Shown piece by piece: positions 9,340 through 54,130 of a stretch of DNA of 64,000 bases. Every line of letters starts with the position of its first letter. The stretch's first letter is position 1. The notes under the pieces were generated by a model, which saw only the letters and a list, made by a program, of their open reading frames with translations, was not told the origin of the DNA and ran no database searches. The DNA comes from Gekko japonicus. Lineage: Eukaryota. The stretch spans positions 370,692 to 434,691 of the forward strand of contig NW_015167073.1 in assembly GCF_001447785.1 (NCBI RefSeq), given 5' to 3'. The translations under genes were made by a program, and so were the position numbers.

Positions 9340-9560
9340 CTTCCAAGCAGTGCTTAAACCCTTCTAAGGTGATGGTCAATGTAATCTGCTTTGTCCAAAT
9401 CCTGAAGTATTCTGAATGGTACTGAAGTAACTATATACAATCCCTTTGTTTCTCTGATTGTCAAACACTTGAGGATTCAGTACAATTACGGACTGTGCAC
9501 GTGGTCCACTAGGGTAGCTCCATTCCCTCTGGGTCATTAACAAAGGCACCAAGGGCGTCA
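9340..9560 (-). promoter_or_regulatory. Candidate OR promoter module, copy P1 (upstream of OR-1)
   Basis: ggtgatggtcaatgtaa (9368) and ctctgggtcattaa (9527-9540) align with P4 gggtgataatcaatataa and ctgtgggtcattaa; TAATGA site at 9534-9539; donor AAG|GTAAGA at 9253. Confidence 0.5.
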
Positions 9561-9774
9561 CGTAGACGGATGGAAATATTTCATAAGTTTGCCTCTTTCC
9601 CACTGTTTTTATGATGCAAGTTTTCAAGTACTCATCAAGGCCTGTACAAAGGAATAAATGGCAAAGAGGAATTTACCATTCATTTATTTTGTCTGTTATC
9701 TCGTCATAGCTCTAAGAAGCCATGAATGGTCCTTTAGTCTCATAACAAACCCTTTGAGATAGAGTAGGTCAAGG

Positions 9775-10690
9775 GGGGGGGTTGGTGGAAGAGCCTCTCC
9801 TTCCCATGCAGAAGGTCTCAGGTTCAATCCCTGGCATCTCCAGTTAAGGATCAGGTAGTAGGTGATGTGAGAGACTTCTTCCTGAGACTTGGTCTTTACT
9901 CTGCTTAAACAGAGGCTTATTGATATAGAGTTGCAAGAGCTCAGAGCCCTTGCCTCCGGAAGGTGCTCCTCAGTAAGGTGGGCCTATCCCCTTTCTGGTG
10001 CTCTACCATATTACTTTTTCTGCCTGACTTCACTGCAAATGTGTAGAGCTTATCTGTTGGCCCGTCTTAATGTTCTCCCCTCTGCTATTCTTGAGGGGAG
10101 ATATAAGCAAATTCCTTATTCAGTCAGGTTCTGTGGATGTAATAGAAGAGAAATAGAAACTGTTGAGCACGTACTCTTACACTGTAAATTGTTAAATGAC
10201 ATTCGAGTGGAATTTATAGAAGCCCCCCTTAGGTTGGTAGCAGGCCAATCGAATAGAATCAAGGTACAATTTCTCCTTGCTTCACGAGATCCGGAGATCA
10301 TTGAACTGACCGCTAAGTTTCTCCATGGTTTTATAAAACGGAAGAGTGACCCTGATCATATTAATGATTCTTAATTTATAAGTCTAAAAACTTAAGTTTA
10401 AAAGTTTAGAATGCCAATTTATTTTATGATTCAGGCATCTTTTGTCTGGTCAAATCTAGCTTGTGACTACTTGAGTTAGGCCTGACATAGCCACAACTAT
10501 CTATTTTATAATTTCTTTTGGATTGCATTATTAATGCTTCTAATATTGTATGCCAATAAAAGGTATTTGAGTTTGAATTGACTTCTTCCTGAGACTCATG
10601 AGAGCCACCGCCAGTCTGAATAGACAATACTAAACTTGATGGACCCAGGGTCTGATTCAGTACAAGGCAGCTTCATATGTGCTCACGTGT
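9775..10690 (+). mobile_element. tRNA-derived SINE (CR1-like tail) interrupted by RTE-X
   Basis: B box ggttcaatccc; halves join across the TSD; a related uninterrupted copy lies at 42628-42826. Confidence 0.7.
9890..10579 (+). mobile_element. RTE-X-like LINE 3' fragment
   Basis: ORF RAYLLARLNVLPSAILEGRY...RFCGC...ETVEHVLLHC (C-terminal zinc knuckle); 17-bp TSD gacttcttcctgagact. Confidence 0.75.
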
Positions 10691-11123
10691 ATATATATAT
10701 GTCTGTGTGTGTGTTTCCCAAGGCCACACAAGTGAGCACCTTATAAGAATATGCACACAATTCTGGATTTCCACATTCAATCCAATGTTCTAATTGTTAC
10801 ATTGCCTCAAAAAAAGGGAACGATGAGGGAGGTTTTTCTGTCCCCCCCTACCCCACCCCCCGATGCTGAAAATAAGAAACTTGGGTTTTTGCATTAGATA
10901 AAAGCTGAGAGTCTCAGGCTGAAAACAGACAAAACTGTGGGAGATCCATCATCTGTTCTTCCGACCGTCTCAGGATAGCAATGGAAATTCTCATATTCAC
11001 TGGGTCCAGTCAAATCCCAGTGTTTTGAATGGTTTCCTTCTACCACAATAGGGAGCGAGCCCAATCCAAAGATGTCAGAATCCCATGTCAAACTTTGAGT
11101 AAAAGTAGGCTTCTGTCTTATGC

Positions 11124-11415
11124 AGAGGCAGTTTGGTGTCGTGGTTAAGTGTGCGGGCTCTAATCTGGGAGAACCAGTTTTGATTCCCCCCCTTCTCTAC
11201 ATGCAGCTGCTGGTGTCACCTTGGGTCACTTACAAGTTCCTTCAGAGCTGTTCTCTGAGGAGCAGCTCTCTCAGAGCTCTCTCAGCCCCACCTACCCCAG
11301 TCACAGAGTGTCTGTTGTGGGAAGGGGAAGGGAAAGAAGATTGTAAACCACTCTGAGAGTCCTTCGAGTATTGAAGGGCTGAGTATAAATCCAATCTCTT
11401 CTTCTCTCTCTGTCT
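11124..11415 (+). mobile_element. Squam3-type tRNA SINE with (CTT)n tail
   Basis: Head gtttggtgtcgtggttaag...ttgattcccc; L2-like 3' end; aaatccaatctcttcttc. Confidence 0.85.
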
Positions 11416-11459
11416 CTCTTCTCCCTCTCTCTTTTTTTTTGGGGGGGGGGGTTTATTTG

Positions 11460-11750
11460 CAGGGCAATTTTTGGGTAGGAACGCACAGGAACGGAGTTCC
11501 AGCTGGCTTCAGTGTTGGCCACGCCCACTGCAGCCAAAACCTCTGCATGCATGGCAACTCCCCCCAGCAACTCCGAGGCGGGCAGGCCAGGGCCCCCCTG
11601 GAAGGATCGGGGAGGCATTTAAATGCCTCCCCGTGCCTTCCCTGGCCTGTCCAAGGATTGGCTTGCCTGCGCAAGCCAAGGGATGACATGGGGGTGTGGC
11701 CTATTATGCTAATGAGTTCCTCCTGGACTTTTTCTACTTAAAAAGCCCTG
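11460..11750. mobile_element. hAT-type MITE, family C
   Basis: Termini CAGGGC...aaaagccctg; ends shared with 24261-24653 and 43890-44290. Confidence 0.7.
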
Positions 11751-11764
11751 GGTATTTGTCTGTG

Positions 11765-11980
11765 TGCATGTGTGCGCGCGCACATGTGTGCCTAAAAGTC
11801 ATGGTTCTGGTGACCCCTAGTGGGGCTTGGATATTAGAGAAGTAGCTTGCCATTGTCTGCCTCCGCATTCTGGCCCTGGTATTCCATGGAGGTCTCCCAT
11901 CCAAGTACTTGGTAGGGTTGGCCCCACTTGTCTTCCAAGATCTGACGAGATCAGGCTTTCCTGGGCTATCCAGGCCGGGG
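11765..11980 (-). mobile_element. 5S-derived SINE
   Basis: ggtctcccatccaagtact...agatctgacgagatcaggc is the reverse complement of the 5S-like head. Confidence 0.75.
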
Positions 11981-12326
11981 CTGCGTCTATCTCATTTTTA
12001 TTCTCAGTTGTGAAGGCGTTTGGCCTTCCTGCGCTTCTGAACACACTTTGAATTTTGAGGACGGAGAGCGGTTGTCAGACAGTCACCACACAATTGCCCA
12101 TCAAAGCGAGTTGCTCGGCATCATGGAGAGGACTAGCAAGTTAAGGGTTATGAGTAAATTAAAGACGAATCCAAGGGATCCAACAGGCATGGAAAGCCTA
12201 TCTATAATGATCAAGAGAGCTGTCCATCCATCTGTGACAAGCGTAACGCCTCCAAAAATAAAGTTGTGCGCGTCAAAACTTGCTGCTGGTTCCAGGTGTC
12301 AAATGTGAAAGGGATCAGAACATTCT

Positions 12327-14099: not shown

Positions 14100-16360
14100 T
14101 AGCACTTACCAACCTGCTCAGCTTCCTGCAATCCGCTCTAAGGTTTTAGAAGGAAAATATAGAAAGATGCCATGTGAAGACAGGTGCTGCCCACGTGCCT
14201 TGGGAGAAGTGGAATCGATGTTCCACATGTTCTTTCGCTGCCCTTTTCATCAGGTTTATAAGGATAAGCTTATCGCCCCCCTCTTGGATAGACCAGCGCT
14301 TGATGCAGAGAGTGCCGATCTAGAGAGGCTTTTTTTTTTTTGTAATATTTTATTTTGGTTTTTAAGTCATATACAGATCACACAATAAATACATTGGATA
14401 TTGCATCATTTTTGGAGTGTCTTATCTGTAGATATCTAACCATCTATCTAGTTTCTGCCATCTATTTTTGAACACAGTGTCAAGTTTTCCTGCAAGTAGC
14501 ATATTTACTTTGTCCATTTCCTTTAGATCTATAATTTTTATAATTAATTCTTCTCTACTTGGCAATCTGTCAGACTTCCAGCATTTGGCTACAGCTATCC
14601 TGGCATTTGTGAGAATGTATAATATCAGACATGCATCATTATATTTTATCCTTTCTGGCAAGATATTTAGCAAGTATATTTCTGGTTTCAACGGTAGATC
14701 AATTTCTAGTATATCTAAGATGGTTTGTTTTATACTTTTCCAGAATTTTACCACTCTTTCACATCTCCACCAAATGTGAAAATAGGAGCCAACATTTCGC
14801 TCACATCTCCAGCAATTTCCGGATACGTTTTTATAACATTTTAATGCTTTATCTGGCGTCCAGTGCCATCTGTGAAACATTTTGAAGATGTTTTCTTTAT
14901 AAGCAGTGGCTCTTAGTATCTTCATTGAATTCCACATTTTTGACCAATTTACCTCAGTTATGGAATTTCCTATATCTTTCTCCCAGGCCTTCATACAGGG
15001 TTTTATTTGTTCTGTTTGCATCTCATCATTTAAGAGGAAGTTATATAGTTTTTGTATTAACTTATTTGCGGAGGGTAGCCAAATTTTATCGAGACTCGTA
15101 TATGTTGTGGTAAAGCCTTTTATCTTATCTTTCGCAAATCTTGATTTTAATTGTAATTTCTCCCAGGCTGATAGATTGATGTTCAATGTCTGTAAAGCTT
15201 CAAAGTTTTTCAGCTCGTTTTCTTTAGTGAGTAGTATTTCGTAGCTGGCGATCTTATTGTCCGTCATTAAGTTTGGTAATATGAAGGCTTCCAGAGGGGA
15301 CACCCATTTCGGTATTTTATTGTAAAATTTCTTTTTTATCGGCCTCCATATCCTTGTTAAAGAATCTCTTAGGATGTGCCTGTGGAAATGTTTTTGTCTT
15401 TCCTTTTCATCGTACCACACATAGGTGTGCCAACCCATGTGTAGGTCAAAGCCTTCCAATTTTAATGTTCTTCTGTCTTCTAATAAAACCCATTCACATA
15501 TCCAACTCATTGCTGCTGCTCTGTAGTAGAGTTTCCAATTTGGTACACCTAAACCGCCTCGCTCTTTTTTTTCCTGTAACGATTTAAGTCTTATTCTGGC
15601 TCTCTTCGCTTGCCATATAAATTTTCTCGTGATTTTATCTAGTTCTTCGCATATTTTTTCATTTTTTAATATCGGAATTGTTTGGGCCAGGAACAAGAAT
15701 CTCGGTAAGATATTCATTTTTACAGTGGCCGTTCTGCCAATCAATGATATGTGGAGATCCTGCCATTTTTCCAAGTCTTTTTTAATTTCTTGTAGCAGTG
15801 GTTTATAATTATTTTCATACAGATGTAAGTTATTACTTGTCATATTAATGCCTAGATATTTGACTTTATTTGTTATTTCCATTTTGCTAATTGTTTGGAG
15901 CTTATTTATTTCTTCTTTGGAACAGTTTTTTGTTAGGATTTTAGTTTTCTTCACATTAATCTTTAGACCTGCCAAGCTGCCATATTCCTGAATTTGGGAC
16001 ATTAGGTGTGTTATTGATATTATAGGATCCTCCAAGATAAAGACTAGACCGATCTAGAGAGGCTTTTGATAGAGGAGAATCAGCAGATCTCCAGGCAAAT
16101 AGCAAAATTCTGCCGGCAACTGGTAAAATCTCACAATAAGAAGCAGATCAAGTAGAATCCTCATTTACCTTTGCATGACTCATAAGTCGTTTCGTTTTAA
16201 ACATAATTATCTTGATATACTGGACCTTTAAACATTTCTCCTTTTAACATTTTAATGATGTTAAGGTTATGTGTTTATTTTTGGAGCTGAAAGCTAATTT
16301 GCTTGTCTCGAATGAATATGTAATATTTTGATAAATGGTCTGACCGCAAATAAATATCAT
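14100..16360 (+). mobile_element. RTE-X-like 3' fragment split by the L1 insertion
   Basis: SKVLEGKYRKMPCEDRCCP...ESMFHMFFRC; resumes after 16049. Confidence 0.6.
14331..16048 (-). mobile_element. L1-clade LINE, 5'-truncated, with a 537-aa uninterrupted ORF2 C-terminal part
   Basis: GLKINVKKTK, KYLGI, GGLGVPN, CWRC...HIWWRC; poly(A); 19-bp TSD ccgatctagagaggctttt at 14315 and 16049. Confidence 0.92.
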
Positions 16361-17533: not shown

Positions 17534-18478
17534 TCAGTTCTTTTGTCCCAACCCTGGTCTTCTCAATACCTTGACCACTGCCCTGTGGATCTCTTTGTTC
17601 CGCAAGCTATAAATGATGGGATTGAGCATGGGTGTCACCACTATGTAAAGGATGGCGGTTTGCTTGTCACGATCAATAACTGCATCCACACCAGGTCGCA
17701 CGTACATAAAGATGAGGGTACTGTAGAAGAGGGTGACCACCACCAGATGGGAGGTACAAGTGGAAAGTGCCTTTCTCCATCCAACCCTTGATGGCATCCA
17801 AAACACAGAGTAGAGAATAAGACCATAGGAGGTTAGGATAACAAAAAAGGGACCCACAAGGATCAACGTAGACACCATTAAAATAATGGGCTCTGTGTAG
17901 CGGGCTTCTTTACACGTATATTTAAACACAACTGGCTGCTCACAGAAGAAGTGGTTGATGCGGTTGCTCCCGCAAAAGGGGAGGGAAATAGTGCCGGTCA
18001 CATTGAGTGAAGCGAGGAGAAACCCAGCTGCCCAGGAAGATGAGGTGAGCTGCCATTGGCGTTTCCTGCTCATAACGGCTGCATATGCCAGGGGGTTGTA
18101 AATGGCCAAACAGCGGTCATAGGCCATGGCACCTAGAAGAAGGTATTCGGTGCATCCCAGGCATGTAGTCGCATACATCTGGGCTGCACACCGGGTGAAG
18201 GAGATAGCCCCATTTCCAGTTATCAGGTGAGCCAGCATCTGCGGCATGGTGGTCGTGACAAAACAGATCTCAAGACCAGAAAGATGGGTGAGGAAGAAGT
18301 ACATGGGTCGGTGGAGGCATGGGTCGGCCCGCACAAGTATTATGATCAGCAGGTTCACCACAATAGTAGCCAAGTACATAAGGAAGAACACCACAAAGAG
18401 CAGAATCTGAGTCTTGCGACGGCTGGAGAGACCCATCAAGATGAACTCTGTTACAAAGGTGGTGTTCTCAGGCCTCAT
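17534..18478 (-). CDS. Olfactory receptor, class II, OR2D-like (OR-2), 314 aa
   Basis: MRPENTT, LHRPMYFFL, MAYDRCLAIYNPL, HFFCE, KALSTCTSHL, PMLNPIIYSLRNKE; acceptor ttcattctctctgcAG at 18492-18493. Confidence 0.95.
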   Translation of the reverse strand: MRPENTTFVTEFILMGLSSRRKTQILLFVVFFLMYLATIVVNLLIIILVRADPCLHRPMYFFLTHLSGLEICFVTTTMPQMLAHLITGNGAISFTRCAAQMYATTCLGCTEYLLLGAMAYDRCLAIYNPLAYAAVMSRKRQWQLTSSSWAAGFLLASLNVTGTISLPFCGSNRINHFFCEQPVVFKYTCKEARYTEPIILMVSTLILVGPFFVILTSYGLILYSVFWMPSRVGWRKALSTCTSHLVVVTLFYSTLIFMYVRPGVDAVIDRDKQTAILYIVVTPMLNPIIYSLRNKEIHRAVVKVLRRPGLGQKN

Positions 18479-18557
18479 CCTGGCCTCTTGGCTGCAGAGA
18501 GAATGAAATAGTTAGACTCTCCACTGCAACCTTACAACACACTAAGGTAAACCCCAA

Positions 18558-18902: not shown

Positions 18903-18931
18903 ACCCCAAAACAACCTGTCAAATTCACCAT

Positions 18932-22095: not shown

Positions 22096-22504
22096 AATCA
22101 ATCACAAATCACAAATTAATATGGATGCAGAACTGCAGCATACAGATACCTACATCATTATTTAACATCTTAGAAATGTGCTCCATAGCTTGCTGTTGGT
22201 GATCATTAGACTCTCCATTAGAAGGAAATTGGAAGGAAATCGGGACGCCCAATTTTCCCAAGCACCTATAAGACCGTAAGAGTTGCATTGTGCAATGATA
22301 AGAGTCACATTGTGCAGCAGATGATAAATCTGTGCAAGCAGTATTGCCCTTGACGGGCTGCAGCTCTCTGGGAGCTCAGGTGTGTGTCACTCCATGTCCT
22401 TTTCACTGAGCTCCTTCCACCAGAACGACCAGAGATTCTTTAATCTTCTGACCATATGCTCTAGCTCACCAAGCCCATGTTCTTCAGCCTCCTTGACAGA
22501 TGTT

Positions 22505-22765
22505 TCTCCAACCAATTTTAAAGCTGCACAAAGTGGTGGTCAATATAGCCTAACTATTTTCTGTGTTTGATGATGGAGAGGCAGCTTTTCCTCCTTATGA
22601 TGTTAAAGGCATGAGGGTTTGGGAAGGTAATAAGAACTATGGAACTCCTTCACAGGAACTGGTTTGATCCCTGTGGTACTTTCACTGCATTATTAACCTT
22701 TTCTCTTTTATGACTTCAGCATCTCATCGGGTCTCAAGAGTTTAATGACGTATGCAATATGGGGT
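22505..22765 (-). promoter_or_regulatory. Candidate OR promoter module, copy P2 (upstream of OR-2)
   Basis: Collinear matches to P3/P4: aaccaattt-aaag, gtggtggtcaatata, gtttgggaaggtaataagaactatg, tgatccct, ttcagc...gggtct, gcaatatg. Confidence 0.55.
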
Positions 22766-22994
22766 GTGTGTGTGTGTGTGTGTGTGTAAGAATCGGTGAA
22801 TTGTTCAAAGAAAGTAGTGGAGAAAACCATAAGGTGTGCCTCACCAAACTCTTTCCAACAATTGGTACGGTGTGGATTTTTCATTCAGACACTTCCTCTG
22901 CCTTAGCTTTCTTTCTGCGGTGAATCTCTTGACAGTGCGGAATAGGGAGATAAAAGGAAACATTAATTCTTATACATTTCATTTATATCACAAG

Positions 22995-29750: not shown

Positions 29751-30674
29751 TCATCTTCGCAATATTTTGGCCACTGCCGCATGGATGTCCTTGTTGCGCA
29801 GGGTGTAAATGATCGGATTAAGAAGTGGGGTGATCACTACATAAAAGACTGCAATGTGTTTGTCTACATCAGAAGCTGAGCTTGACCGGGGTCTCATAAA
29901 CATGGAAACAACAGTGCCATAGTACAAGGAAACCACCAGCAAATGGGAGCCACATGTGGAGAAGGCCTTGCGCCTTCCAGCAGTTGACTTCATTTGTAAC
30001 ACAGTGGAAAGTATTTGAATATATGAGGTCAGGATAGCTGCAAGTGGACCTGCGAGGAGTACTCCTGCCAACACAAAAATGATGGCCTCTGTGATGTGGG
30101 TATCTGCGCATGCTAGTTTCAGCACGAGGGGTAACTCACAGTAGAAGTGGTTGATGTGGTTGGGTCCACAGTAGGGGTGGCGAAGGACGCAGGCCACGTA
30201 TATGAGAGCAGAGAAGAAGCCCCCTGCCCAGGAGGCTGAAGCCAGCTGCAGCTGCCGACCCCGGCCCATGGCAATGGTGTATACCAGGGGATAGCAGATG
30301 GCCAAGTAGCGGTCGTAGGCCATGACACCCAGCAGAAGGAACTCAACAGTGCCCAGGCATGTACTGACGTACATCTGGGCTGTGCAATGTCTAAAAGAAA
30401 TGATTCCATTTCCAGCCTGGAGGTGAGCCAGCATCTGGGGCATGCTGGTGGTGACGTAACAGATCTCCAGGCCTGCAAAGTGCTTTAGGAAGAAGTACAT
30501 GGGTGTGTGGAGATGAGGGTCAGCCCGGATGACCATGATGATCCCCAGATTCCCCGTGACTGTAAGTGTGTAGATGAGAAGGATTATGACAAAGAGCAGG
30601 ATCTGGGATCTTCGGTGGCTGGTGAGTCCCACCAGGATGAACTCGGTGATAGATGTGAAGTTCTCAGATCTCAT
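29751..30674 (-). CDS. Olfactory receptor, class II, OR2D-like (OR-3), 307 aa
   Basis: MRSENFT, LHTPMYFFL, MAYDRYLAICYPL, HFYCELP..KLAC, KAFSTCGSHL, PLLNPIIYTLRNKD; acceptor ttctttctctacAAGCAG about 10 nt before the ATG. Confidence 0.96.
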   Translation of the reverse strand: MRSENFTSITEFILVGLTSHRRSQILLFVIILLIYTLTVTGNLGIIMVIRADPHLHTPMYFFLKHFAGLEICYVTTSMPQMLAHLQAGNGIISFRHCTAQMYVSTCLGTVEFLLLGVMAYDRYLAICYPLVYTIAMGRGRQLQLASASWAGGFFSALIYVACVLRHPYCGPNHINHFYCELPLVLKLACADTHITEAIIFVLAGVLLAGPLAAILTSYIQILSTVLQMKSTAGRRKAFSTCGSHLLVVSLYYGTVVSMFMRPRSSSASDVDKHIAVFYVVITPLLNPIIYTLRNKDIHAAVAKILRR

Positions 30675-30859
30675 GCTGGCTTCCTGCTTGTAGAGAAAGA
30701 ACAGCAGTGAAAGAAAGCAACATTCACTGGCTACCGGAGAGCCCTTAAAACGGCAAGTTTACTTACACCACTAGCATAGTCAATCCAAAAGCCAGCTCTT
30801 AACACTCAAGCCTGATGATCTCTGTTCAAATGGTTGCAGGATTCTCCCTGATTTGCATT

Positions 30860-36836: not shown

Positions 36837-37288
36837 GGGAGGGGTTGTGGGGATGTCTGTGTGGGGTGCCCCCCGACTTATTTAAAGGCCTCCCAAATTA
36901 AAAAAATCCTGGCTATGGGTCTGTTCAATCATGCAAAGCATCTGCTCTGCCACTCACCTGAGCCACTTGGAAAGGTACACCTTCAGCTGATTCTTCAAGC
37001 TGTTGCCAAGGATGGTAAATGCAACCTAAGCACTCTCTGCTAGAAAAAAGAGCTGCTCCGTCTCCCGGTGGCTTCTCATACTTAGTGGGAAAGATGCAAG
37101 GAGTGACTAAGCTAAAAAAGACGATGGCTTTCCTCCGCAGGGACTGCTCCAATCCCTTTGCTCCTTTCTTCTGGCTCATTAAGAGCCTTTCGTCAGTTAC
37201 TTAATTTTGTTTTCTTCAAATAAGAAATGATGAAATACAAATGGCCACCTTTGACTACGTGATGCGGGTATATAATTAGGGTTGTATG

Positions 37289-41809: not shown

Positions 41810-42627
41810 AGTTTGATCACAATATTCAGAAGTAGGGAACCACCCCTTCCAGATGTCTCCAACATCAGAGGGGCAGGTGAGTTAGCCTCTTTGCTTTCTC
41901 ACAGATCATGGAATGAATTGTGACTCTTCCTCCTCCCTTTCATCCATGCTCATTGAGTATAGAAGGAGAAAATTTCCACCTCAGTTACCTGCCCTGCCTC
42001 CCAATAAACAAAGTGCAGAAATCTATGCAGGCTCCAAAACAGCCGCCCAGTGTTATTGAGAGAAGCAATTCTCATAAGGGCTCAGGGCCCTGCCACACTA
42101 CCTGACAACTTCTCTCCAAATGGTAGGGTTTCACCTCTGGGTTTGAAACTTCCAGGAGATTTGGGGACACAGTCTGTGAAGGGCAGGGTTTAAGGAGGTG
42201 AAGGACCTCATCAGGGAACGATGCTGTAGAGTCCACCCTCCAAAGCAGCCATTTTCTCCAGGGGAACTGACCTCTAGTGTCTGTACATCAGCTGTAATAT
42301 CAGAAGATCTCCAGGCCCTGCCTGGAGGTTGGCAACCCTATGAATTGACAATGTGCCCTTTTTGGCTCTGGTATGGTGGTTTTCCTGCCTACCTTCTGGT
42401 GCTGTTACCTTCAAATTGGCCCAACCCCATTCCAAGTTGGTGCTGAATGGAGATGATTAGCTTGGTACCCTTGGGACAAGAAATTTGTTTCTACTGAGTC
42501 TTATTGAGTTCTGTTTAACCCAATGTTCTGAGTTTGAATGTCAGCAGGACTCCAAAGCCCCATCCTCTCTTATCTAAGATACTTCAAGCGGACATACTAG
42601 TTACCTCATACATGAAAAGCAGGAGAG

Positions 42628-42826
42628 GAGGGGCCAGTAGCTCAGAGAATCTGGTTGGCATGCAGAAGGTCCCTGGTTCAGTCCCCATCATTTCCAGTTA
42701 AAATGTCCAGGTGATGTGAAAGACTTCTACCTGAGACCTTGGAGAGCCCCGGCCAGTCTGAGTAGATAATACTGACTCTGAGGGACCAATGGTCTGACTC
42801 AGTATAAGGCAGCTTCATGTGTTCAT
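42628..42826 (+). mobile_element. tRNA-derived SINE (CR1-like tail); partial copy at ~47850-47940
   Basis: gggccagtagctcag...ggttcagtccc; tail cttcatgtgttcatg. Confidence 0.7.
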
Positions 42827-43239
42827 GAATACTATCTCTCCTTATATATAATTGAATAGTGGGTGCCAAAGTTCTAATTCTAAAATGCACTCCCTTAGTG
42901 TATGGCTGATGGCACTGCTCCTCAGCATATATCGCCACCAATCAGAAGGCAAAGCCCGGGTCCCGCCCACACCACAACTGCTGCGACAACCTGGTCTTTT
43001 GCATATGGAAGCTGATTGGACTTCACTCCATTCCACACCTCAAACTCCCCCCCCCCCGCAAGGCAGTTGGAATGTCAGTTGCATATGGAACCTGCTGTAT
43101 TCTGGTGGTGTGCAGGTCCCAGGTTCATGTTTTAAAAGCAGACTGACACTGTTTGCCCCAAACCAGAGCACTCTCCCAGAGCCTCTTTCTAGCTCTCGTT
43201 GTATTTATTTCCACAACGGGCCTTATTTCTAGTCCCCGA

Positions 43240-43562
43240 TATATACGGTAATTCCACAACATTAAGAGGTCCTCTTCCAGCCAATTTGTGAAGACCTCTA
43301 CAGTGATAACCAACATAACTTGGCTTCTGCATCTGCCTGACTATTCTCCATATTAGAAGGCTTGACAGTGTGTTGATTTTTCCCCCGTTTGAGATGTAAA
43401 AGGCTGCAGATTTCAGCAAGATAATTTAAAAAGTGCCTCTGCTCCACAAAAATTGCTCTGATTCCCTTGGCATTTTTTTAACTGGATCATTAATATTTGT
43501 TGTTTGTTATTTCAGCCTCTTGGGTCTTCAACACTGAACGTAGCAATATGAGGGAAATGTAC
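43240..43562 (-). promoter_or_regulatory. Candidate OR promoter module, copy P3 (upstream of OR-3)
   Basis: ~300 bp collinear with 53825-54130, including an identical 23-mer gttatttcagcctcttgggtctt; TAATGA at 43487-43492; O/E-like ttcccttgg and cctcttggg. Confidence 0.6.
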
Positions 43563-43889
43563 CTGAACTTGGGGGTCGGAGGAATCCATACAGGGTAGAT
43601 TGCCAAGCCCTTGATTCTGATTTGATTTGATTGATTTGATTTATATCTCGCCCTCTGTTTCCATAACACAGCTTTTCCATTCACTTTGCAATTTCTTGAC
43701 AAATGAGAACAACAGGAGAGTATTTAATGTTTTAAAATGTTTATTTAATCTTCCCTCCCAGGAGTTGAGAACAGTGCTGCAGAGCCCAGTCTATCTCTGT
43801 TCAGTCTGAAATAAGTCCCACTGAGTTCAGTGACCCTTACTCCCAAGTAACTGAGCATACCACCGCAACCATAGTCAGATAAGAACCAC

Positions 43890-45330: not shown

Positions 45331-45488
45331 TTCCGTGCGCCTTGGTGTTTAGTCATGCCGGCCACATGACCACGGAAACGTCTTCGGACAGCGCTGGCTC
45401 TTCGGCTTTGAAACGGAGATGAGCACCGCAACCCTAGAGTCGGATTCGACTGGCTTTCGAGCAAGGGAACCTTTACCTTTACCTTTAC
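45331..45488 (+). mobile_element. Sauria SINE 3' part
   Basis: (ACCTTT)3 tail. Confidence 0.85.
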
Positions 45489-45881: not shown

Positions 45882-46829
45882 TCAGATTTTCGGCTCTAAA
45901 TGATGTCTTCGCAGCACTTTGGCCGCTGCCCCGTGGACATCCTTGTTCCGCAGGGTATAAATGACAGGGTTGAGCAGAGGGGTGACCACCGTGTAAAACA
46001 CAGCAATCCGTTTATCATGATTGGAAGGGGGGTTTGACCGGGGAATTAAGTACATAGAAATGACAGTGCCATAGAACACAGTCACAACAACAAGGTGGGA
46101 AGCACACGTGGAGAAGGCTTTGCGCTGACTGGTGGTTGATCGCATTTTTACCACCGAAAACAGTATGAACCCGTAGGAAGTCAGGACGACAAAGACAGGA
46201 ATCACAAGGACAACAGCCGCCATGATGAAAACAATGGCCTGTGAAACACGAGTGTCATCACAGGCGAGTTTCAGCACCACCGGCATCTCACATATGAAGT
46301 GGTTGATGTGGTTAGAGCCGCAGTAGGAGTGGCGAAAAGTCACGCACACATATATCATGCTAAAAAGGATGCCCGCTGTCCAACAAGCACAGGCAAGTTG
46401 CCACTGGCGATACTTGCTCATGGCGACGGCATACGTCAGGGGATGGAAGATGGCCAAAAACCGGTCATAGGCCATGACGCCCAGCAGAAAGCATTCTGCA
46501 GTGCCCATGATCAATACAGCAAACACCTGGAGTGCACAGCCAGTGAAGGATATGATTCCATTCCCTGCCAGGAGGTGAGCCATCATCTGTGGCTCCGTGC
46601 TGGTAGCATAGCAGATCTCTATGGTTGATAGGTTCATGAGGAAGAAGTACATGGGCGTATGGAGGCGAGAGTCAGACTGGACGAGCAAGATGACCGCAGC
46701 ATTCCCCGCTACGGTGAGTAAATATGTCAGAAGGATGACCCCAAAGAGTAGAAACTGTGTCTTGCGGTGGTTGGACAATCCCTCCAAGACGAACTCTGTG
46801 GCAGAGGTGGAATTCTCAGCCCCCATCAT
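45882..46829 (-). CDS. Olfactory receptor, class II, OR2D-like (OR-4), 315 aa (314 from the second Met)
   Basis: MMGAENST, LHTPMYFFL, MAYDRFLAIFHPL, HFICEMP..KLAC, KAFSTCASHL, PLLNPVIYTLRNKD; acceptor ccctctctttgcAG at 46840-46841. Confidence 0.95.
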   Translation of the reverse strand: MMGAENSTSATEFVLEGLSNHRKTQFLLFGVILLTYLLTVAGNAAVILLVQSDSRLHTPMYFFLMNLSTIEICYATSTEPQMMAHLLAGNGIISFTGCALQVFAVLIMGTAECFLLGVMAYDRFLAIFHPLTYAVAMSKYRQWQLACACWTAGILFSMIYVCVTFRHSYCGSNHINHFICEMPVVLKLACDDTRVSQAIVFIMAAVVLVIPVFVVLTSYGFILFSVVKMRSTTSQRKAFSTCASHLVVVTVFYGTVISMYLIPRSNPPSNHDKRIAVFYTVVTPLLNPVIYTLRNKDVHGAAAKVLRRHHLEPKI

Positions 46830-46867
46830 GTTATCCTGTCTGCAAAGAGAGGGCAACTGTAACACAA

Positions 46868-47402
46868 GAAGAAGAAGAGGAAGAAGAGGAGGAGGAGGAG
46901 GAGATTGAGATTGGATTTATACCCCGCCCTTCACTACCCAAAGGTGTCTCAGAGTGGCTTACAAACTCCTTTCCCTTCCCCTCCCCACAACAGACACCCT
47001 GTGAGATAGAAGAAGAAGAAGAGATTGGATTTATCCCCCGCCCTTCACTACCCAAAAGAGTCTCAGAGCGGCTTACAAACTCCTTTCCCTTCCCCTCCTC
47101 ACAACAGACACCCTGTGAGGTAGAAGAAGAAGAGATTGGATATATACCCCGCCCTTCACTACCCAAAGGTGTCTCAGAGCGGCTTACAAACTCCTTTCCC
47201 TTCCCCTCCCCACAACAGACACTCTGTGAGGTAGGCGGGGCTGAGAGAGCTCTTGACAGAAACGGCTCTTTTTCAAGGACAGCTCTTATCAGAGCTACGG
47301 CTTGCCCAAGGCCATCCAGCCAGGTGCAAGTGGAGGAGTGGGAAATCAAACCTGGTTCTCCCAGATTAGAGTCCGCACACTTAACCACTACACCAAACTG
47401 GC
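46868..47402 (-). mobile_element. Squam3-type SINE with three tandem 3' modules
   Basis: Same unit and junction as 27587-28256. Confidence 0.9.
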
Positions 47403-48130: not shown

Positions 48131-50801
48131 AAGAACATAAGAACATAAGAGACGCCTCTTTCTTTACCTGTTCTTTCCCATGCATAATCTTATAAACCTC
48201 GATCATGTCACCCCTCAGTCATCTTTTCTCCAAGCTAAAGAGCCCTAAGCACTTTAACCTTTCCTCATAGGGAAAGTGTTCCAACCCTTTGATCATTCGA
48301 GTTGCCCTTTTCTGCACTTTTTCCAAAGCTATAATATCCTTTTTAAGGTGTGGTGCCCAGAACTGCACACAGTATTCCAAATGAGGTCTCACCATTGATT
48401 TATATAGGGGCATTATTATATTGGCTGATCTGTTTTCAATACCCTTCCTAATAATCCCCAGCATAGCATTGGCCTTCTTTATTGCAGTCACACACTGTCT
48501 CGACATTTTCAGTGAGTTATCCACTACAACTCCAAGATCTCTCTCTTGCTCAGTCTCTGCCAGTTCAGACCCCATCAATGTGTATTTATATTTAGGATTT
48601 TTGGCTCCAATGTGCATCACCTTGCACTTGGCCACATTGAACCCCATTTGCCATGTTGATGCCCGCTCGCCCATCCTTGACAGATCCCCTTGGAGTGCCT
48701 CACAATCCTCACTGGTTTTCACCACCCTGAACAACTTTGTATCATCCGCAAATTTAGCCACTTCACTGCTTACTCCCATCTCCAAATCATTAATGAACAA
48801 GTTAAAAAGCAGTGGACCAAGTACTGATCCCTGCGGTACCCCACTGCTTACCACCCTCCACTGAGAAAATTGCCCACCTACACTCACTCTCTGTTTTCTA
48901 TGAACTAGCCAGTTTTTGATCCATAAAAGGACTTGTCCTTCTATCCCATGATTTTTGAGCTTACTTAGGAGCCTTTGATGAGGAACTTTATCAAAAGCTT
49001 TCTGGAAGTCAAGGTAAATAATATCTATTGGATCCCCCTTGTCCACATGTTTGTTCACCCCCTCAAAGAACACTAACAGGTTAGTGAGACAAGATCTTCC
49101 CTTACAGAAACCGTGCTGAGTCTGCCTCAATAGGTTTTGTTCATCTATGTGCCTACTAATTCTTTCCTTAATAATGGTTTCCACCAATTTACCCGGTATC
49201 GACGTCAGACTGACTGGCCTGTAATTTCCCGGATCTCCTCTGGAACCCTTTTTAAAGATGGGAGTGACATTAGCTACCTTCCAATCCTCAGGAATGGAGG
49301 CAGATTTTAAGGAAAGATTACATATCTTTGTCAGGAGATCTACAAGTTCACATTTGAGTTCTTTCAGAACTCTCGGATGTATGCCATCTGGGCCTGGTGA
49401 TTTTTCAGTTTTTAAGTTGTCTATCAGTTTTAGGACCTCCTCTCTCATCACCTCAATCTGACTCAGGTCTTCCAACACCCCTCCTGAAATCAGTGGTTCT
49501 GGAGTGGGCAAGCACTTCTCATCTTCCACAGTGAAGACGGAGGCAAAAAATGCATTTAGCTTCTCAGCCATTTCCCTATCATCCTTCAATACTCCTTTTA
49601 CCCCTTGGTCGTCCAAGGGCCCCACTGCCTCCCTGGCTGGTTTCCTGTTTCTAATGTATTTGAAGAAAGTTTTATTGTTGGTTTTTACGTTTTTTGCTAT
49701 ATGCTCCTCATATTCCCTTTTTGCCTGCCTGACCTCAGACTTGCATTTTATTTGCCATAGCCTGTGTTCCGTTTTATCAGCCTCACTGTGACTAGCTTTC
49801 CACTGCTTAAAGGAATTCTTTTTACTTTTTACAGCCTCCATTACTCTGTTTGTTAACCATGCAGGCTTTTTCCTATACCTGTTTGTGCCTTTCCTAACCT
49901 GCGGAATATATATTTTTTGAGCTTCTAGGATCGTAGTTTTAAATAGATCCCAAGCTTCCCCAATTGTTTTGACCCTTTCTACTTTTCCTTTCAGTTTCCT
50001 CCCCACGTGTCCCCTCATATCAGAGAAATTACCCCTTTTAAAGTTAAAAATGGTTGTGTGAGTCTTTTTGGCCAATTCTCTATTTGTACAAATGATGAAC
50101 TCAACAACATTATGATCACTGTTTCCAAGCGGTGCAATCACTTTTACATCTCTCACCAGGTCTTGAGTGTTACTTAGGACCAAATCAAGGATCGCCTCTC
50201 CCCTGGTAGGTTCCGTGACCATCTGCTCCATAGCACAGTCATTTAGAGTGTCTAGAAACTCAATCTCTTTTTCCCGACTAGAACACATATTGACCCAATC
50301 AATGTGTGGGTAGTTAAAATCACCTATTATTACACAGTGTTTTTGTCTAGTTGCTATCTTTAAGGCATTCATCATTTTATAATCCTCCTCTATCTTTTGA
50401 TCTGGTGGGCGATAACAAACTCCCAGTGTTAAGTTTCCTTTTGGCCCCCCTATTTCAACCCATAGAACTTCCAGAAGCGAATCCAATTCACTTAGCCTCT
50501 CAATCTTTCTAGACTTTATACCCTCTCTGACATACAGAGCTACCCCACCTCCAACCCTTCCCCCCCTATCCTTCCGATATAATATATAACCGGGAATCAC
50601 TGTGTCCCACTGATTTTCCTCATCCCACCAAGTTTCAGAAATACCCACAATGTCTATTTTTCCCTCCGACACCAAGCACTCCAACTCCCCGATTTTACCT
50701 CGGACACTTCTAGCATTTGTATAGAAACAGCTGTAATTTCCCTTACAAGTTAAGCCTGCATCCTTCCTCTTGCTATCTCGAGTCGTTGTCCGGCAGTCCA
50801 T
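48131..50801 (-). mobile_element. Young CR1 LINE with an 860-aa open ORF2 (APE endonuclease + RT), a premature stop and a 3' internal deletion
   Basis: YTNARS, SETWW, GDFN, SDH, PGPDG, YRPVSLTS, QHGF, DFQKAFD, GVPQGS, FADD; (TTCTTATG)n tail. Confidence 0.95.
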
Positions 50802-50803
50802 GT

Positions 50804-51520
50804 CACCAGATGACAGAGAATCACTTGCCCCAGAGTCCCTATCTATACCTTGTGGCTAATAGCCACCGATGGAACTCTGCTCCAGATGCTTATCTAATTC
50901 CCTTTTGAAGCCATCCATGCTTGTAGCACCCACCACTTCCTGTGGCAGTGAATTCCAAGTGTTAATCACTCTTTGGGTGAAAAAGTACTTCCTCTCATCT
51001 GTTCTAACCCGACCGCTCAGCAATTTCATGGAGTGCCCACGAGTTCTTGTATTGTGAGAAAGGGAGAAAAGTACCTCTTTCTCTACCTGCTCTTTCCCAT
51101 GCATAATCTTATAAACCTCAATCATGTCACCCCTCAGTCATCATTTCTCCAAGCTAAAGAGCCCTAAGCGCCTTAACCTTTCCTCATAGGGAAAGTGTTC
51201 CAACTTTCATTCGAGTTGCCCTTTTCTGCACTTTTTCCAAAGCTATAATATCCTTTTTGAGGTGTGGTGACCAGAATTGCACACAGTATTCCAAATGAGG
51301 TCTCACCATTGATTTATATAGGGGCATTATGATATTGGCTGATCTGTTTTCAATACCCTTCCTAATAATCCCCAGCATAGCATTGGCCTTCTTTATTGCA
51401 GTCACACACGGTCTCGACATTTTCAGTGAGTTATCTACTACAACTCCAAGATCTCTCTCTTGATCAGTCTCTGCCAGTTCAGACCTCATCAACGTGTCTC
51501 TGCCAGTTCAGACCCCATCA
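50804..51520 (-). mobile_element. Second CR1 3' fragment lacking the tail, joined to the 5' end of the long copy
   Basis: MIEVYKIMHGKE...WNSLP; frameshifted upstream. Confidence 0.9.
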
Positions 51521-52136: not shown

Positions 52137-52344
52137 CAATGTTCCCTCTAAGCTGTGGAGTCTTGTGAGCAAAAATTCTACTTTGTGAGCTTCTGTGGCA
52201 TTAAAGCTGTGAGCGAGTGATTTGGCTACTGCATAAATTAGTTTGCTCTGGAGCCCTCCTTCCTGAGCGAAGACAAAAATATGTGAGCCAGAGGCTAAAA
52301 AATCATGAGCTAGCTCACAGTAACTCAGCTTAGAGGGAACACTG
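52137..52344. mobile_element. MITE family A
   Basis: TSD cttgtgag. Confidence 0.9.
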
Positions 52345-52422
52345 CTTGTGAGTTCCTGACTGATAGAAGCAGGTGAACTTTTAAGGCAGAATACAGAGCA
52401 TACACACAAGTGTGGTCAGCAG

Positions 52423-52598
52423 CAGTGTTCCCTCTAAGCTGAGTTAGGGTGAGCTAGCTCACAGTTTTTTAGCCTCCGGCTCACACATTTTTGTCTCAGC
52501 TCAGGAAGGATGACTCCAGAGCAAACTAATGTATGCAGGAGCCAAATCGCTCGCTCACGACTTTAATGCCAGTAGCTTAGAGCTTAGAGGGAACATTG
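52423..52598. mobile_element. MITE family A (opposite orientation, internal deletion)
   Basis: TSD gtcagcag. Confidence 0.88.
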
Positions 52599-52728
52599 GT
52601 CAGCAGTATTAGAAATCGAACTTTTTCAAGGTAGAAAATGCTCACCACTTTAGCAACTCAAGTGAGAGGGAGACACACAATACAGATGAAAAGGGTGAAC
52701 AGTGTGATGTAATCTAGCAAACATAGAA

Positions 52729-52768
<40 letters not shown>

Positions 52769-52957
52769 TCTCTGTAACATGCACATACGAACACAGAATC
52801 TGAGTTCCATACCGACAGACATAATCTTACCTTCATTCTTCTCCCTGGTAATCCTCAAAAAGTAAGATCCCCCCCCCCCCATTACCCTGGTTTATGTACA
52901 AAAGCTCAGTGAATGTCAGTCACCTTTCTAATGCAAAAAGTTTTAAAAACACAATGC

Positions 52958-53310
52958 AGGCATGTCCAACTTCGAACAGGTGGTGATCTATTTTTTCCGG
53001 CCAAAAGTGCCGGTGATCTACCACCAGGAAAATAAAGTTTCAAATTAGTTTCAAATTAGATTTTAACCCACTAAAGTTGGGTTCCACCACACACACACAC
53101 CCCTTTATAATGTACCTTCTGTCACTTACTGGTAAGCAAAATAAGCAAAAACAAAACAGAGAGACGACGATCCAGAAAGGACTGCGAACATTTTTTACCA
53201 CCAAACAATCATCAAAAAAAAACCAAACACCTGTCCAGCAAACCAGGAGACCAAGTGGGGTTGGTGATCTACCTCTGACCCCTCCATGATCTACTGGTTG
53301 GACATACCTG
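52958..53310. mobile_element. hAT-like MITE
   Basis: TIR caggcatgtccaac / gttggacatacctg; repeated ggtgatcta subterminal motifs. Confidence 0.7.
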
Positions 53311-53824
53311 CAATAAGGTGTTTCGGACTGTGCACAGATTTCAACAGGGAAGTTATACCTCTTGTGTGCGGGTCAAAGTTAGAGAACTCTTCTTTCCTGT
53401 TCTGGAAAAGAATCCTGTAGCAAGATACAGGTACCCTCATGCCTATTGTCTCCAGTAGAAAGGCAGAGAAACATTTAGGATTCCTTAGATGCAGAGGACC
53501 TAGGCCAGAAGATAGTTACAACTTTGGATACACACACACATCCAAATAAAAATACGGATAGTGCATGTTACTTTTTGCTAGTTTGCTGTTGTGGGCTATT
53601 AGAAGAGAGGAAGGAAATAACGACTTCTAAGCCTTTCCATCACCTCTTGGACTTCTTTTATATTCCATCAGACAAATGATTTATTTCTCCTAGTATTCTT
53701 TCTTTTGACTGGCAGCACCTCACCAAGGCCAAATGTAGATGCCCTCTGATATATCTGAGATACTTTGAGTGGGCACACACGGGACCTCATGCATGCAAAT
53801 GCAAAGCATGAATACTACTACTGG

Positions 53825-54130
53825 TATATAATTCCACAACCATCTTAACCAATTTGTAAAGACTTTTAGGGTGATAATCAATATAACTTGGCTTCTGCCC
53901 TTCTCTGCCTGTTCTCAGTGTTAGGAGACATGACAGTATGCTGAAATTGCTTTCTCTTTGAGGTGTGAAAGATTGACAGTTTGGGCAAGGTAATAAAGAC
54001 TATGATGGTACTCCGCAAGGATTGCTCTGATCCCTTTGCTGCCTTCCTGTGGGTCATTAATATCTGTTGTTGGTTATTTCAGCCTCTTGGGTCTTAAGCA
54101 TTGAACCTAGCAGGATGAGGGGGAAATGCA
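53825..54130 (-). promoter_or_regulatory. Candidate OR promoter module, copy P4 (upstream of OR-4)
   Basis: Collinear with P1-P3; TAATGA at 54054-54059 directly followed on the minus strand by CCCACAGGA. Confidence 0.6.

What the first reader, a model, noticed from the sequence alone, without database searches (positions are those of the whole stretch)
9340..54130. One conserved non-coding module per OR gene: candidate squamate OR promoter with homeodomain and O/E-like sites
Seen: four diverged, collinear, same-orientation copies of a 220-320 bp non-coding block with no transposon hallmarks, at ~9340-9560, 22505-22765, 43240-43562 and 53825-54130. There is exactly one in each intergenic interval, about 3.1, 4.2, 12.8 and 7.2 kb upstream (minus strand) of OR-1 to OR-4. 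Similarity peaks at short motifs: (g)gtgrtrrycaayrta, a tccc/tcca box, TCATTAA, and ttcagc.tct..gggtct (a 23-mer identical between P3 and P4). Established: mouse OR promoters and enhancers rely on TAATGA-type homeodomain (Lhx2) and O/E (Ebf) sites and lie kilobases upstream, across 5' UTR introns. Inference: this is the promoter/first exon, co-duplicated with each gene and preserved while the surrounding DNA was turned over by transposons. That would extend the Lhx2/Ebf promoter code to a reptile OR clade.
Basis: partly seen in the sequence, partly recalled or inferred. Interest (0 to 1): 0.8.

Follow-up and report, generated by a model that had tools for sequence, protein, structure and literature searches.

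The report
Conserved upstream module of gecko OR genes
Each smell-receptor gene in this lizard cluster keeps a ~300-base non-coding block a few kilobases upstream that ends in a splice donor, so it is most likely the gene's promoter and first non-coding exon, as is already known for mouse receptor clusters; no RNA evidence was available.

Summary
The repeated block is real. A profile built from any four copies finds the fifth (E 1e-8 to 2e-42) and nothing else in 64 kb on either strand. The extra copy, Px (36922-37204), puts two copies in the OR-3/OR-4 interval, and a partial tandem duplicate lies beside P1.

All five ORs keep a splice acceptor 9-13 nt before the ATG. P1, P2, Px and P4, the copies nearest upstream of OR-1 to OR-4, share a homologous strong minus-strand donor (YWG|GTGAG) where the deep homology ends. 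The redundant copy P3 has lost this donor and is split by a ~600-bp transposon. A TAATGA homeodomain site is conserved in four of the five copies. The "O/E-like" sites match no better than chance.

The three RNA runs of this species showed no reads on OR-4 or on P3, so transcription is untested. A genome-wide scan and orthologous loci could not be obtained.

Best reading (about 0.55): a subfamily-specific promoter plus non-coding exon 1. This is the squamate counterpart of the RACE-validated paralogue-conserved promoter islands of mouse V1R genes, so a new member of a known kind. The scan had not recorded this block on other DNA.

The parts
9300..9570 (-). P1: module copy 2.9-3.1 kb upstream of the OR-1 ATG; the most diverged copy
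   Evidence: Leave-one-out nhmmer hit at 9320-9540, E 1e-8. TCATTAA at 9534-9540 lies only 5 nt from ATTCCCT at 9522-9528.
9318..9326 (-). P1 predicted exon-1 splice donor, CTG|GTGAGA
   Evidence: PWM score 9.4. It lies 56 nt after the conserved ATTGACCATCAC motif.
9058..9235 (-). Partial tandem duplicate of the low-coordinate (exon/donor) part of P1
   Evidence: nhmmer E 3.5e-8 to 4.7e-7. 9058-9198 matches 9252-9386 at E 1.4e-6.
22480..22775 (-). P2: module copy about 4 kb upstream of OR-2
   Evidence: Leave-one-out hit at 22506-22763, E 1.9e-20. TTATTAA at 22690-22696 and ATCCCT at 22667-22672.
22464..22472 (-). P2 predicted donor, TTG|GTGAGC
   Evidence: Score 7.9. It lies 74 nt after the motif and is homologous to the P4 and Px donors.
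36922..37215 (-).
   Evidence: E 1.5e-12. Leave-one-out hit at 36922-37204, E 1.4e-19. TCATTAA at 37176-37182.
36952..36960 (-). Px predicted donor, CAG|GTGAGT (perfect consensus)
   Evidence: Score 13.1, above the 12.6 of the textbook CAG|GTAAGT. It lies 62 nt after the motif.
43225..43617 (-). P3: module copy 12.6 kb upstream of OR-3 and 2.3 kb downstream of OR-4; probably a decaying, redundant copy
   Evidence: Leave-one-out E 2e-33. No strong donor before the transposon. RNA depth is 0 over 43370-43546.
42625..43225 (.). Transposon insertion of about 600 bp that splits P3 from its low-side flank (limits approximate)
   Evidence: P3-P4 homology stops at about 43225 and resumes at about 42625. 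High-copy RNA and DNA read pile-ups over 42662-43250. In-window copies at 9765, 10557 and 47837.
42547..42556 (-). P3 counterpart of the donor, mutated to TTTG|GAGTCC (GT lost)
   Evidence: Aligned with the P1, P2, Px and P4 donors.
53689..54160 (-). P4: module copy 6.9-7.3 kb upstream of OR-4; the only pairing without an assembly gap
   Evidence: Leave-one-out E 1.7e-42. Identity to P3 is 54-86% in 50-column steps across the whole range. TCATTAA at 54054-54060.
53718..53726 (-). P4 predicted donor, TTG|GTGAGG
   Evidence: Score 8.4. Homologous to the P2 donor (GGCYTTGGTGAG). It lies about 95 nt further from the motif than in P1, P2 and Px.
6441..6460 (-). OR-1 splice acceptor (Y-tract TTGCAG|); exon 2 starts at 6440, ATG at 6427
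18492..18511 (-). OR-2 splice acceptor; exon 2 starts at 18491, ATG at 18478
30684..30703 (-). OR-3 splice acceptor (shifted: ..ACAAGCAG|); exon 2 starts at 30683, ATG at 30674
46840..46859 (-). OR-4 splice acceptor; exon 2 starts at 46839, ATG at 46826 or 46829
59324..59343 (-). OR-5 splice acceptor; its module is expected beyond base 64000 and was not seen
   Evidence: No profile hit in 59310-64000.
5483..6427 (-). OR-1 coding exon
   Evidence: 7tm_4, E 2e-53.
17534..18478 (-). OR-2 coding exon
   Evidence: 7tm_4, E 4e-51.
29751..30674 (-). OR-3 coding exon
   Evidence: 7tm_4, E 4e-51.
45882..46826 (-). OR-4 coding exon
   Evidence: 7tm_4, E 2e-46. RNA depth 0.
58366..59310 (-). OR-5 coding exon
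   Evidence: 7tm_4, E 1e-47.

Best explanation
The block is the proximal promoter plus the non-coding first exon of this OR subfamily, read on the minus strand.

The high-coordinate half holds the most conserved stretch. It carries a TAATGA homeodomain-type site, 17-19 nt from a TCCC half-site, inside a ~30-nt conserved segment (minus strand AGCAAAGGGATCAGAGCAATCCTTGCGGAG), followed by an A/T-rich box. Transcription would start downstream of these. The low-coordinate half would be a 5' UTR exon of about 100-200 nt that ends at a YWG|GTGAG donor. A 2.9-6.9 kb intron, filled with transposons, would be spliced to the conserved acceptor 9-13 nt before each ATG.

Predicted pairings are P1->OR-1, P2->OR-2, Px->OR-3 and P4->OR-4. 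P3 is a redundant copy that lost its donor and took a transposon insertion. It was left either by an offset duplication unit or by loss of a gene between P3 and Px.

Shown: the homology, the copy number in the window, the orientation, the conserved acceptors, the homologous donors and the conserved homeodomain heptamer. Inferred: transcription, the TSS position, which factors bind, and which block serves which gene.
For: 1. Every copy is recovered by a profile of the other four (E 1e-8 to 1.7e-42). There are no other hits on either strand of the 64 kb apart from a local partial duplicate.
2. An all-against-all tile search shows that this is the only low-copy, same-strand, non-transposon, non-coding homology shared by the intervals.
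3. Synonymous divergence between the ORs is 0.76-1.56 and fourfold-site identity is 0.36-0.62. Neutral DNA of that age should not align, yet block distances are about half of dS.
4. All five ORs have a conserved acceptor just before the ATG.
5. Strong minus-strand donors lie 56-74 nt after a conserved motif in P1, P2 and Px, and a homologous one lies in P4. For three of five random points to have a donor this good within +-25 nt, P is about 0.001 (a post hoc test). No such pattern exists on the + strand.
6. The only copy without the donor is the redundant one, which is also split by a transposon.
7. The architecture fits mouse OR and V1R genes. Those have an intronless CDS, 5' UTR introns and promoters kilobases upstream carrying homeodomain sites (PMC3247239, PMC12547500). 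In mouse V1R subfamilies, ~500-bp islands of paralogue homology about 3 kb upstream hold the TSS by 5' RACE, and a second homology peak lies over the acceptor (PMC1955453).
Against: 1. There is no transcript evidence. The three RNA runs of the species gave zero reads on the OR-4 CDS and on the P3 core, so they are uninformative.
2. No canonical O/E site was found. Matches are 6-7 of 8, at the chance rate.
3. GC content (40-46%) is barely below the window's 45%.
4. Block distances (P3-P4 much closer than the rest) scale with the OR on the block's high-coordinate (3') side, not with the OR it would drive. This needs an offset duplication unit, a lost gene or gene conversion.
5. P3-P4 similarity is not sharply peaked: the flank is 57-66% identical against 54-86% in the block.
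6. Whether the profile hits many non-OR loci in the genome could not be tested.
7. The donor PWM was written from memory, and the donor test is post hoc.
Confidence: 0.55

Rival explanations
1. The block is a non-functional relic. It would be an ancient interspersed repeat or a piece of the ancestral duplication unit, copied along with the ORs. It looks conserved only because the surrounding DNA was replaced by transposons, or because gene conversion homogenised some copies.
For: - The size (~300 bp) is like that of a SINE.
- The P3-P4 flank is nearly as similar as the block, and the P3-P4 distance is close to the neutral divergence of OR4-OR5.
- Gene conversion between paralogous promoters was proposed for V1Rs (PMC1955453).
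- Genome-wide copy number was not testable.
- P2 is flanked by a 22-nt imperfect direct repeat.
Against: - All five copies have the same orientation and are collinear with the genes. None lies on the other strand, whereas the real SINE families in the window occur on both strands.
- There is no tRNA-like head, tail, terminal inverted repeat or consistent target-site duplication.
- No reads or contigs at 92% likeness or more fell on the P3 core, while known repeats pile up by the thousands.
- The deep copies (P1, P2, Px) are still recognisable at dS above 1.
- The donor is kept in exactly the four copies that precede an intact OR.
Confidence: 0.2
2. The block is a cis-regulatory element such as an enhancer or choice element, and not the promoter or first exon. 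It would be bound by homeodomain and other factors, act without regard to orientation on a neighbouring OR, and the true TSS would lie elsewhere.
For: - It has a patchwork of conserved 8-30-mers, including TAATGA and a TCCC half-site at a fixed 17-19 nt spacing in four copies.
- P1 has the two sites nearly juxtaposed, somewhat like the mouse composite motif (PMC5608512).
Against: - Mouse OR enhancers number about 63 for more than 1000 genes, not one per gene, and are defined by juxtaposed Lhx2/Ebf sites, where inserting 2 bp already impairs binding (PMC5608512). Four of the five copies fail this.
- The conserved donor at the block's edge and the conserved acceptors point to an exon.
Confidence: 0.13
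3. The block belongs to the OR on its high-coordinate side, as the end of a long 3' UTR, a 3' exon or a downstream element (P1 with OR-2, P2 with OR-3, P3 with OR-4, P4 with OR-5).
For: - Block distances scale with these pairings. P3-P4 is the closest pair, as is OR4-OR5, and P1 is the most distant, as is OR-2.
- P1 and P2 are joined to OR-2 and OR-3 without an assembly gap.
- With transposons removed, P3 lies under 1 kb from the OR-4 stop codon.
Against: - No conserved polyadenylation signal on the minus strand.
- No block lies downstream of OR-1.
- The conserved element at the block's end is a splice donor, not an acceptor or a poly(A) site.
- The tree topology fits both assignments equally.
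- An offset duplication unit or a lost gene explains the distances.
Confidence: 0.08

Closest known systems
Paralogue-conserved promoter islands of mouse V1R 'promoter subfamilies' (Stewart & Lane 2007, PMC1955453; it cites Lane et al. 2002)
   Same: Tandem chemoreceptor paralogues with an intronless CDS. There are two homology peaks. One covers the CDS plus the acceptor just upstream. The other is an island of a few hundred bp several kb upstream, separated by low-homology, repeat-filled intron. The homology is shared only within a subfamily.
   Different: In mouse the TSS was mapped into the island by 5' RACE, whereas here nothing is mapped. The mouse islands are 500-1000 bp and mostly young. 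Here the block is ~300 bp and far more diverged (dS 0.8-1.6). The gene family (OR, not V1R) and the host (gecko) also differ.
Mouse OR proximal promoters (Young et al. 2011, PMC3247239; review PMC12547500)
   Same: 5' UTR introns, a promoter kilobases from the ATG, no CpG island, a homeodomain-type TAAT site, an A/T-rich box, and a ~200-300 bp functional unit.
   Different: 78% of mouse OR promoters have a conserved O/E site within 200 bp of the TSS. No convincing O/E site was found here. The AT-richness is marginal.
Greek Island OR enhancers with the composite Lhx2/Ebf motif (Monahan et al. 2017, PMC5608512)
   Same: A homeodomain site close to a TCCC-type half-site.
   Different: The spacing is 17-19 nt rather than juxtaposed (only P1 is close). 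There is one block per gene rather than about one per cluster. There is a splice donor at the edge.

Membership tests
Paralogue-conserved chemoreceptor promoter island (V1R type) | Island of non-coding homology kilobases upstream of the coding exon, shared by the subfamily members | tested here: met
   Five copies, leave-one-out E 1e-8 to 1.7e-42. It is the only such homology in the intervals.
Paralogue-conserved chemoreceptor promoter island (V1R type) | Second homology peak over the acceptor just upstream of the CDS | tested here: met
   Conserved Y-tract/AG 9-13 nt before all five ATGs.
Paralogue-conserved chemoreceptor promoter island (V1R type) | TSS maps inside the island, and exon 1 is spliced to the coding exon | not testable with these tools
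   The RNA runs gave zero reads on OR-4 and P3. Indirect support only: a homologous strong donor in 4 of 5 copies.
Mouse-type OR proximal promoter (O/E + homeodomain) | Homeodomain (TAAT-core, Lhx2-type) site near the TSS | tested here: met
   TCATTAA (+ strand) at 9534, 37176, 43487 and 54054, and TTATTAA at 22690. It is aligned in four copies and shifted in P1. Binding was not tested.
Mouse-type OR proximal promoter (O/E + homeodomain) | O/E (Ebf) site TCCCNNGGGA within about 200 bp of the TSS | tested here: inconclusive
   Best matches are 6-7 of 8, one or two per block, against a background of 3.8 per kb for 6 of 8. The two 7-of-8 matches lie at different aligned positions. Only the TCCC half is conserved.
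Mouse-type OR proximal promoter (O/E + homeodomain) | AT-rich, no CpG island | tested here: met
   GC 0.40-0.465 against 0.454 for the window, and 1-5 CpG per block. The difference is small.
Greek Island enhancer | Juxtaposed (composite) Lhx2/Ebf motif with rigid spacing | tested here: not met
   The homeodomain site and the TCCC half-site are 17-19 nt apart in P2, Px, P3 and P4, and 5 nt apart in P1.
Interspersed repeat (SINE, MITE) | tRNA- or 5S-like head, tail, terminal inverted repeats or target-site duplications | tested here: not met
   ARAGORN found none, Rfam found nothing on the blocks, and there are no consistent terminal repeats.
Interspersed repeat (SINE, MITE) | Many dispersed copies in both orientations, away from the gene family | not testable with these tools
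   In the window there are 5 copies, all on the + strand. No pile-up at 92% likeness or more on the P3 core.

The most novel reading that the evidence does not exclude
Squamate OR promoters of this subfamily keep the homeodomain site but have replaced the canonical O/E site. In its place is a different, strongly conserved ~30-nt element (everted GGGAT..ATCCC half-sites) held at a fixed 17-19 nt from TAATGA. This would point to a reptile-specific partner factor or grammar in OR choice. In addition, tandem duplication with breakpoints inside the 5' introns would shuffle promoters between neighbouring ORs, so that P4, a copy of the module ahead of OR-3, now drives OR-4.
Probability: 0.15. Interest if true: 0.55.

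Novelty: new member of a known kind. Interest (0 to 1): 0.4.

Why it matters
OR transcription start sites are hard to predict and are unmapped in reptiles. If the reading holds, the block gives a sequence handle (a profile plus donor and acceptor coordinates) for annotating first exons and promoters of one gecko OR subfamily. It also gives a non-mammalian test of how much of the mouse homeodomain/O-E promoter logic is shared. The principle of paralogue-conserved promoter islands upstream of 5' UTR introns is already established in mouse, so this extends known biology and does not add a new mechanism.

Tried and rejected
- RNA evidence. The look-up of sequencing runs found no run on record as RNA that holds the stretch, and three RNA raw-read runs were added under the same species label. 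Read laying on 41600-46900 showed reads only on transposons, with depth 0 on the OR-4 CDS and the P3 core. This is uninformative and does not count against the hypothesis.
- Structured RNA. The RNAalifold consensus energy is only -5.6 kcal/mol over 391 columns, and Rfam has no hit on the blocks.
- Coding exon. There are 2-8 stops in every frame of every copy.
- tRNA-derived SINE. ARAGORN found none.
- Transposon ends. No consistent inverted or direct terminal repeats.
- Tree congruence, to decide between the upstream and downstream gene assignments. The ML topologies fit both. My earlier distance-based impression that OR-1 pairs with OR-3 was not borne out. Only the relative distances favour the 3' neighbour.
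- O/E enrichment. Matches are at the chance rate.
- Plus-strand promoter reading (CCAAT box, then a TATA-like CAATATAAC). The motifs are present in P2, P3 and P4, but there is no consistent plus-strand donor. I left it as unsupported motif-gazing.
- Earlier notes of the scan. Searches by sequence and by words found nothing on this block.

Full report
**Setting.** The window holds five intact olfactory receptor genes on the minus strand, all Pfam 7tm_4 with E 1e-46 to 2e-53.
- OR-1: 5483-6427
- OR-2: 17534-18478
- OR-3: 29751-30674
- OR-4: 45882-46826
- OR-5: 58366-59310
- An OR C-terminal fragment also lies at 1377-1538.

Earlier notes of this scan call the genome a gecko; I did not check that. 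The intervals between the genes are full of transposons: SINE families on both strands, L1 and other LINE pieces.

- In leave-one-out tests each copy is recovered by a profile of the other four. E is 1e-8 for P1, 1.9e-20 for P2, 1.4e-19 for Px (extended to 36922-37204), 2e-33 for P3 and 1.7e-42 for P4.
- With filters off, nothing else in the window reaches significance on either strand, except a partial tandem duplicate beside P1 (9058-9235).
- 'Exactly one per interval' is therefore wrong, because the OR-3/OR-4 interval has Px and P3.
- The 23-mer shared by P3 and P4 and the stated distances are correct.
- An all-against-all search of 400-bp tiles shows that this block is the only low-copy, same-strand, non-transposon, non-coding homology shared by the intervals.

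**Assembly gaps.** No block, gene, donor or acceptor touches an N run.
- The gaps at 7649-7836, 20417-20441 and 34902-35055 lie in the predicted introns of OR-1, OR-2 and OR-3. The gap at 41399-41570 lies between Px and P3.
- Only P4-to-OR-4 is free of gaps.
- P1 and P2 are joined without a gap to the genes on their other side (OR-2, OR-3).
- Continuity across the gaps was not tested and nothing was filled in. Distances are estimates.

**Is it conserved beyond neutral?**
- Synonymous divergence between the ORs is 0.76 (OR-4/OR-5) to 1.56, and fourfold-site identity is 0.36-0.62. DNA evolving at that rate should be unalignable for all pairs but the youngest.
- ML distances between blocks are roughly half of the corresponding dS. 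They are probably underestimated by alignment bias.
- For P3-P4 the case is weaker. Their homology spans about 470 bp (P4 53689-54160), at 57-66% in the low-side flank and 54-86% in the block. That is close to the 62% fourfold identity of OR-4/OR-5.
- The argument for constraint therefore rests mainly on the deep copies P1, P2 and Px.

**What it is not.**
- There is no open frame: 2-8 stops in every frame.
- There is no consensus RNA structure: -5.6 kcal/mol over 391 columns.
- There is no Rfam hit on the blocks.
- There is no tRNA-like sequence.
- There are no consistent terminal repeats.
- In the laid reads, known repeats pile up by the thousands, while the P3 core (43370-43546) has depth 0 at 92% likeness or more in all four runs. 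It is therefore not a young high-copy repeat. An old repeat cannot be excluded without a genome scan.

**Gene structure.** All five ORs keep a polypyrimidine tract and AG 9-13 nt before the ATG (TTGCAG|GCAGG..ATG). Homology between the paralogues ends just upstream of it. Each gene therefore needs an upstream non-coding exon, as in mammals (PMC3247239).

**The donor.** This was the most informative result.
- On the minus strand, strong donors lie at the low-coordinate edge of the block:
  - P1, CTG|GTGAGA, last exon base 9324
  - P2, TTG|GTGAGC, 22470
  - Px, CAG|GTGAGT, 36958
- They lie 56, 74 and 62 nt after the conserved motif ATTGACCATCAC.
- Donors of this quality occur about once per kb on that strand. 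The chance that three of five anchor points have one within +-25 nt is about 0.001. This test is post hoc, and the PWM was written from memory.
- P4 has a homologous donor (TTG|GTGAGG, 53724; GGCYTTGGTGAG shared with P2) about 95 nt further on.
- In P3 the counterpart reads TTTG|GAGTCC, so the GT is lost. P3 is also cut from that segment by a ~600-bp transposon at about 42625-43225.
- So the copy nearest upstream of each intact OR (P1, P2, Px, P4) keeps the donor, and the one redundant copy has lost it.
- No comparable pattern exists on the + strand.

**Motifs.**
- On the minus strand the high-coordinate half reads TTAATGA, then 17-19 nt, then a ~30-nt segment that is the most conserved part (AGCAAAGGGATCAGAGCAATCCTTGCGGAG in P4), then an A/T-rich box (TCTTTATTACC).
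- The homeodomain-type heptamer is kept in four copies. It lies about 210-220 nt upstream of the donor in P1, P2 (as TTATTAA) and Px.
- The O/E claim does not hold. The best matches to TCCCNNGGGA are 6-7 of 8, and the window has 3.8 such matches per kb. The two 7-of-8 matches are at different aligned positions.
- GC content is only slightly below the window mean.

**Which gene does a block belong to?**
- The ML trees are (P1,(P2,Px)66,(P3,P4)77) for the blocks and ((OR1,OR2),(OR3,(OR4,OR5)100)84) for the genes.
- The topology fits both the upstream and the downstream assignment.
- The relative distances (P3-P4 much smaller than P2-P3, which is smaller than P1-P3) match OR4-OR5, OR3-OR4 and OR2-OR4. 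That is the gene on the block's 3' side.
- This does not refute a promoter. A tandem duplication with breakpoints in two neighbouring 5' introns would copy [CDS + next gene's promoter] as a unit. Alternatively, a gene once driven by P3 may have been lost between P3 and Px, or may be hidden in the gap at 41399-41570. Gene conversion, proposed for V1R promoters (PMC1955453), is a further possibility.
- Against a 3' role: there is no conserved poly(A) signal, there is no block downstream of OR-1, and the conserved edge element is a donor.

**RNA.**
- No listed holder of the query stretch is on record as RNA. Three RNA raw-read runs were added under the same species label.
- On 41600-46900 they covered only transposons. 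The OR-4 CDS and the P3 core had depth 0.
- The samples evidently do not express this OR, so the result says nothing about the block.
- The follow-up note on another window of this genome also reported no RNA for ORs.

**Comparison with known systems.**
- The closest precedent is the mouse V1R gene block. It has one homology peak over the CDS and acceptor and a second island of a few hundred bp about 3 kb upstream. That island is shared within a subfamily and shown by 5' RACE to hold the TSS (PMC1955453).
- Mouse OR promoters lie across 5' UTR introns and carry O/E sites (78% have a conserved one), homeodomain sites and often TATA-like sites. About 300 bp is enough to drive OR-like expression (PMC3247239, PMC12547500).
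- Greek Island enhancers need juxtaposed Lhx2/Ebf sites and number about one per cluster (PMC5608512). The block fails both criteria.

**Verdict.**
- The finding is a real, conserved, gene-associated non-coding module.
- The most likely function is promoter plus non-coding exon 1 on the minus strand (about 0.55). It is a new member of a known kind.
- The two decisive tests could not be run here: TSS mapping in olfactory epithelium and a genome-wide profile scan.

Noticed in passing
window 11868-11974 (-), with related copies at 940-1189, 3898-4050, 21061-21261 and 55251-55449: An Rfam 5S rRNA match (41.1 bits, gathering score 38) sits inside a repeat that has at least five diverged copies on both strands of the window. 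It looks like a 5S-rRNA-derived SINE family and not a 5S gene.
   Followed up: partly
window 14425-16035 (-): A 537-aa ORF with no Pfam hit aligns to residues 708-1251 of human L1 ORF2p (E 7e-53). It is the C-terminal part of an L1 element lying between P1 and OR-2.
   Followed up: yes
window 48222-50801 (-): An 860-aa open LINE ORF with endonuclease and reverse transcriptase domains lies in the predicted OR-4 intron. Fragments at 36263-36837 and 51074-51497 are about 95% identical, so the family is young.
   Followed up: partly
window 6413-6568 and 6790-6946: A local 156-bp duplication (92% identical) includes the OR-1 start codon, its acceptor and about 130 bp upstream. A second acceptor/ATG copy therefore lies 380 bp further up in the predicted intron.
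   Followed up: no
window 1377-1538 (-): An OR C-terminal fragment (about 54 aa, 40% identical to OR-4) with no detectable rest of the gene and no module between it and OR-1. It is a beheaded pseudogene at the low end of the cluster.
   Followed up: no
window 22451-22472 and 22826-22847: P2 is bracketed by a 22-nt imperfect direct repeat (77% identical). Both copies read TTGGTGAG on the minus strand, and the low-coordinate copy is the predicted P2 donor. This may be chance or a small local duplication.
   Followed up: no
window 46907-47234 and 27639-28089: Tandem arrays of a ~114-bp unit (93-97% identical between units) belong to the abundant SINE-like family. One array starts directly upstream of the OR-4 acceptor.
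   Followed up: no
window 59324-59339 (-): The OR-5 5' UTR just after the acceptor holds an out-of-frame upstream ATG (GCAGGATGAGAAGATG). OR-4 has two adjacent in-frame ATGs.
   Followed up: no
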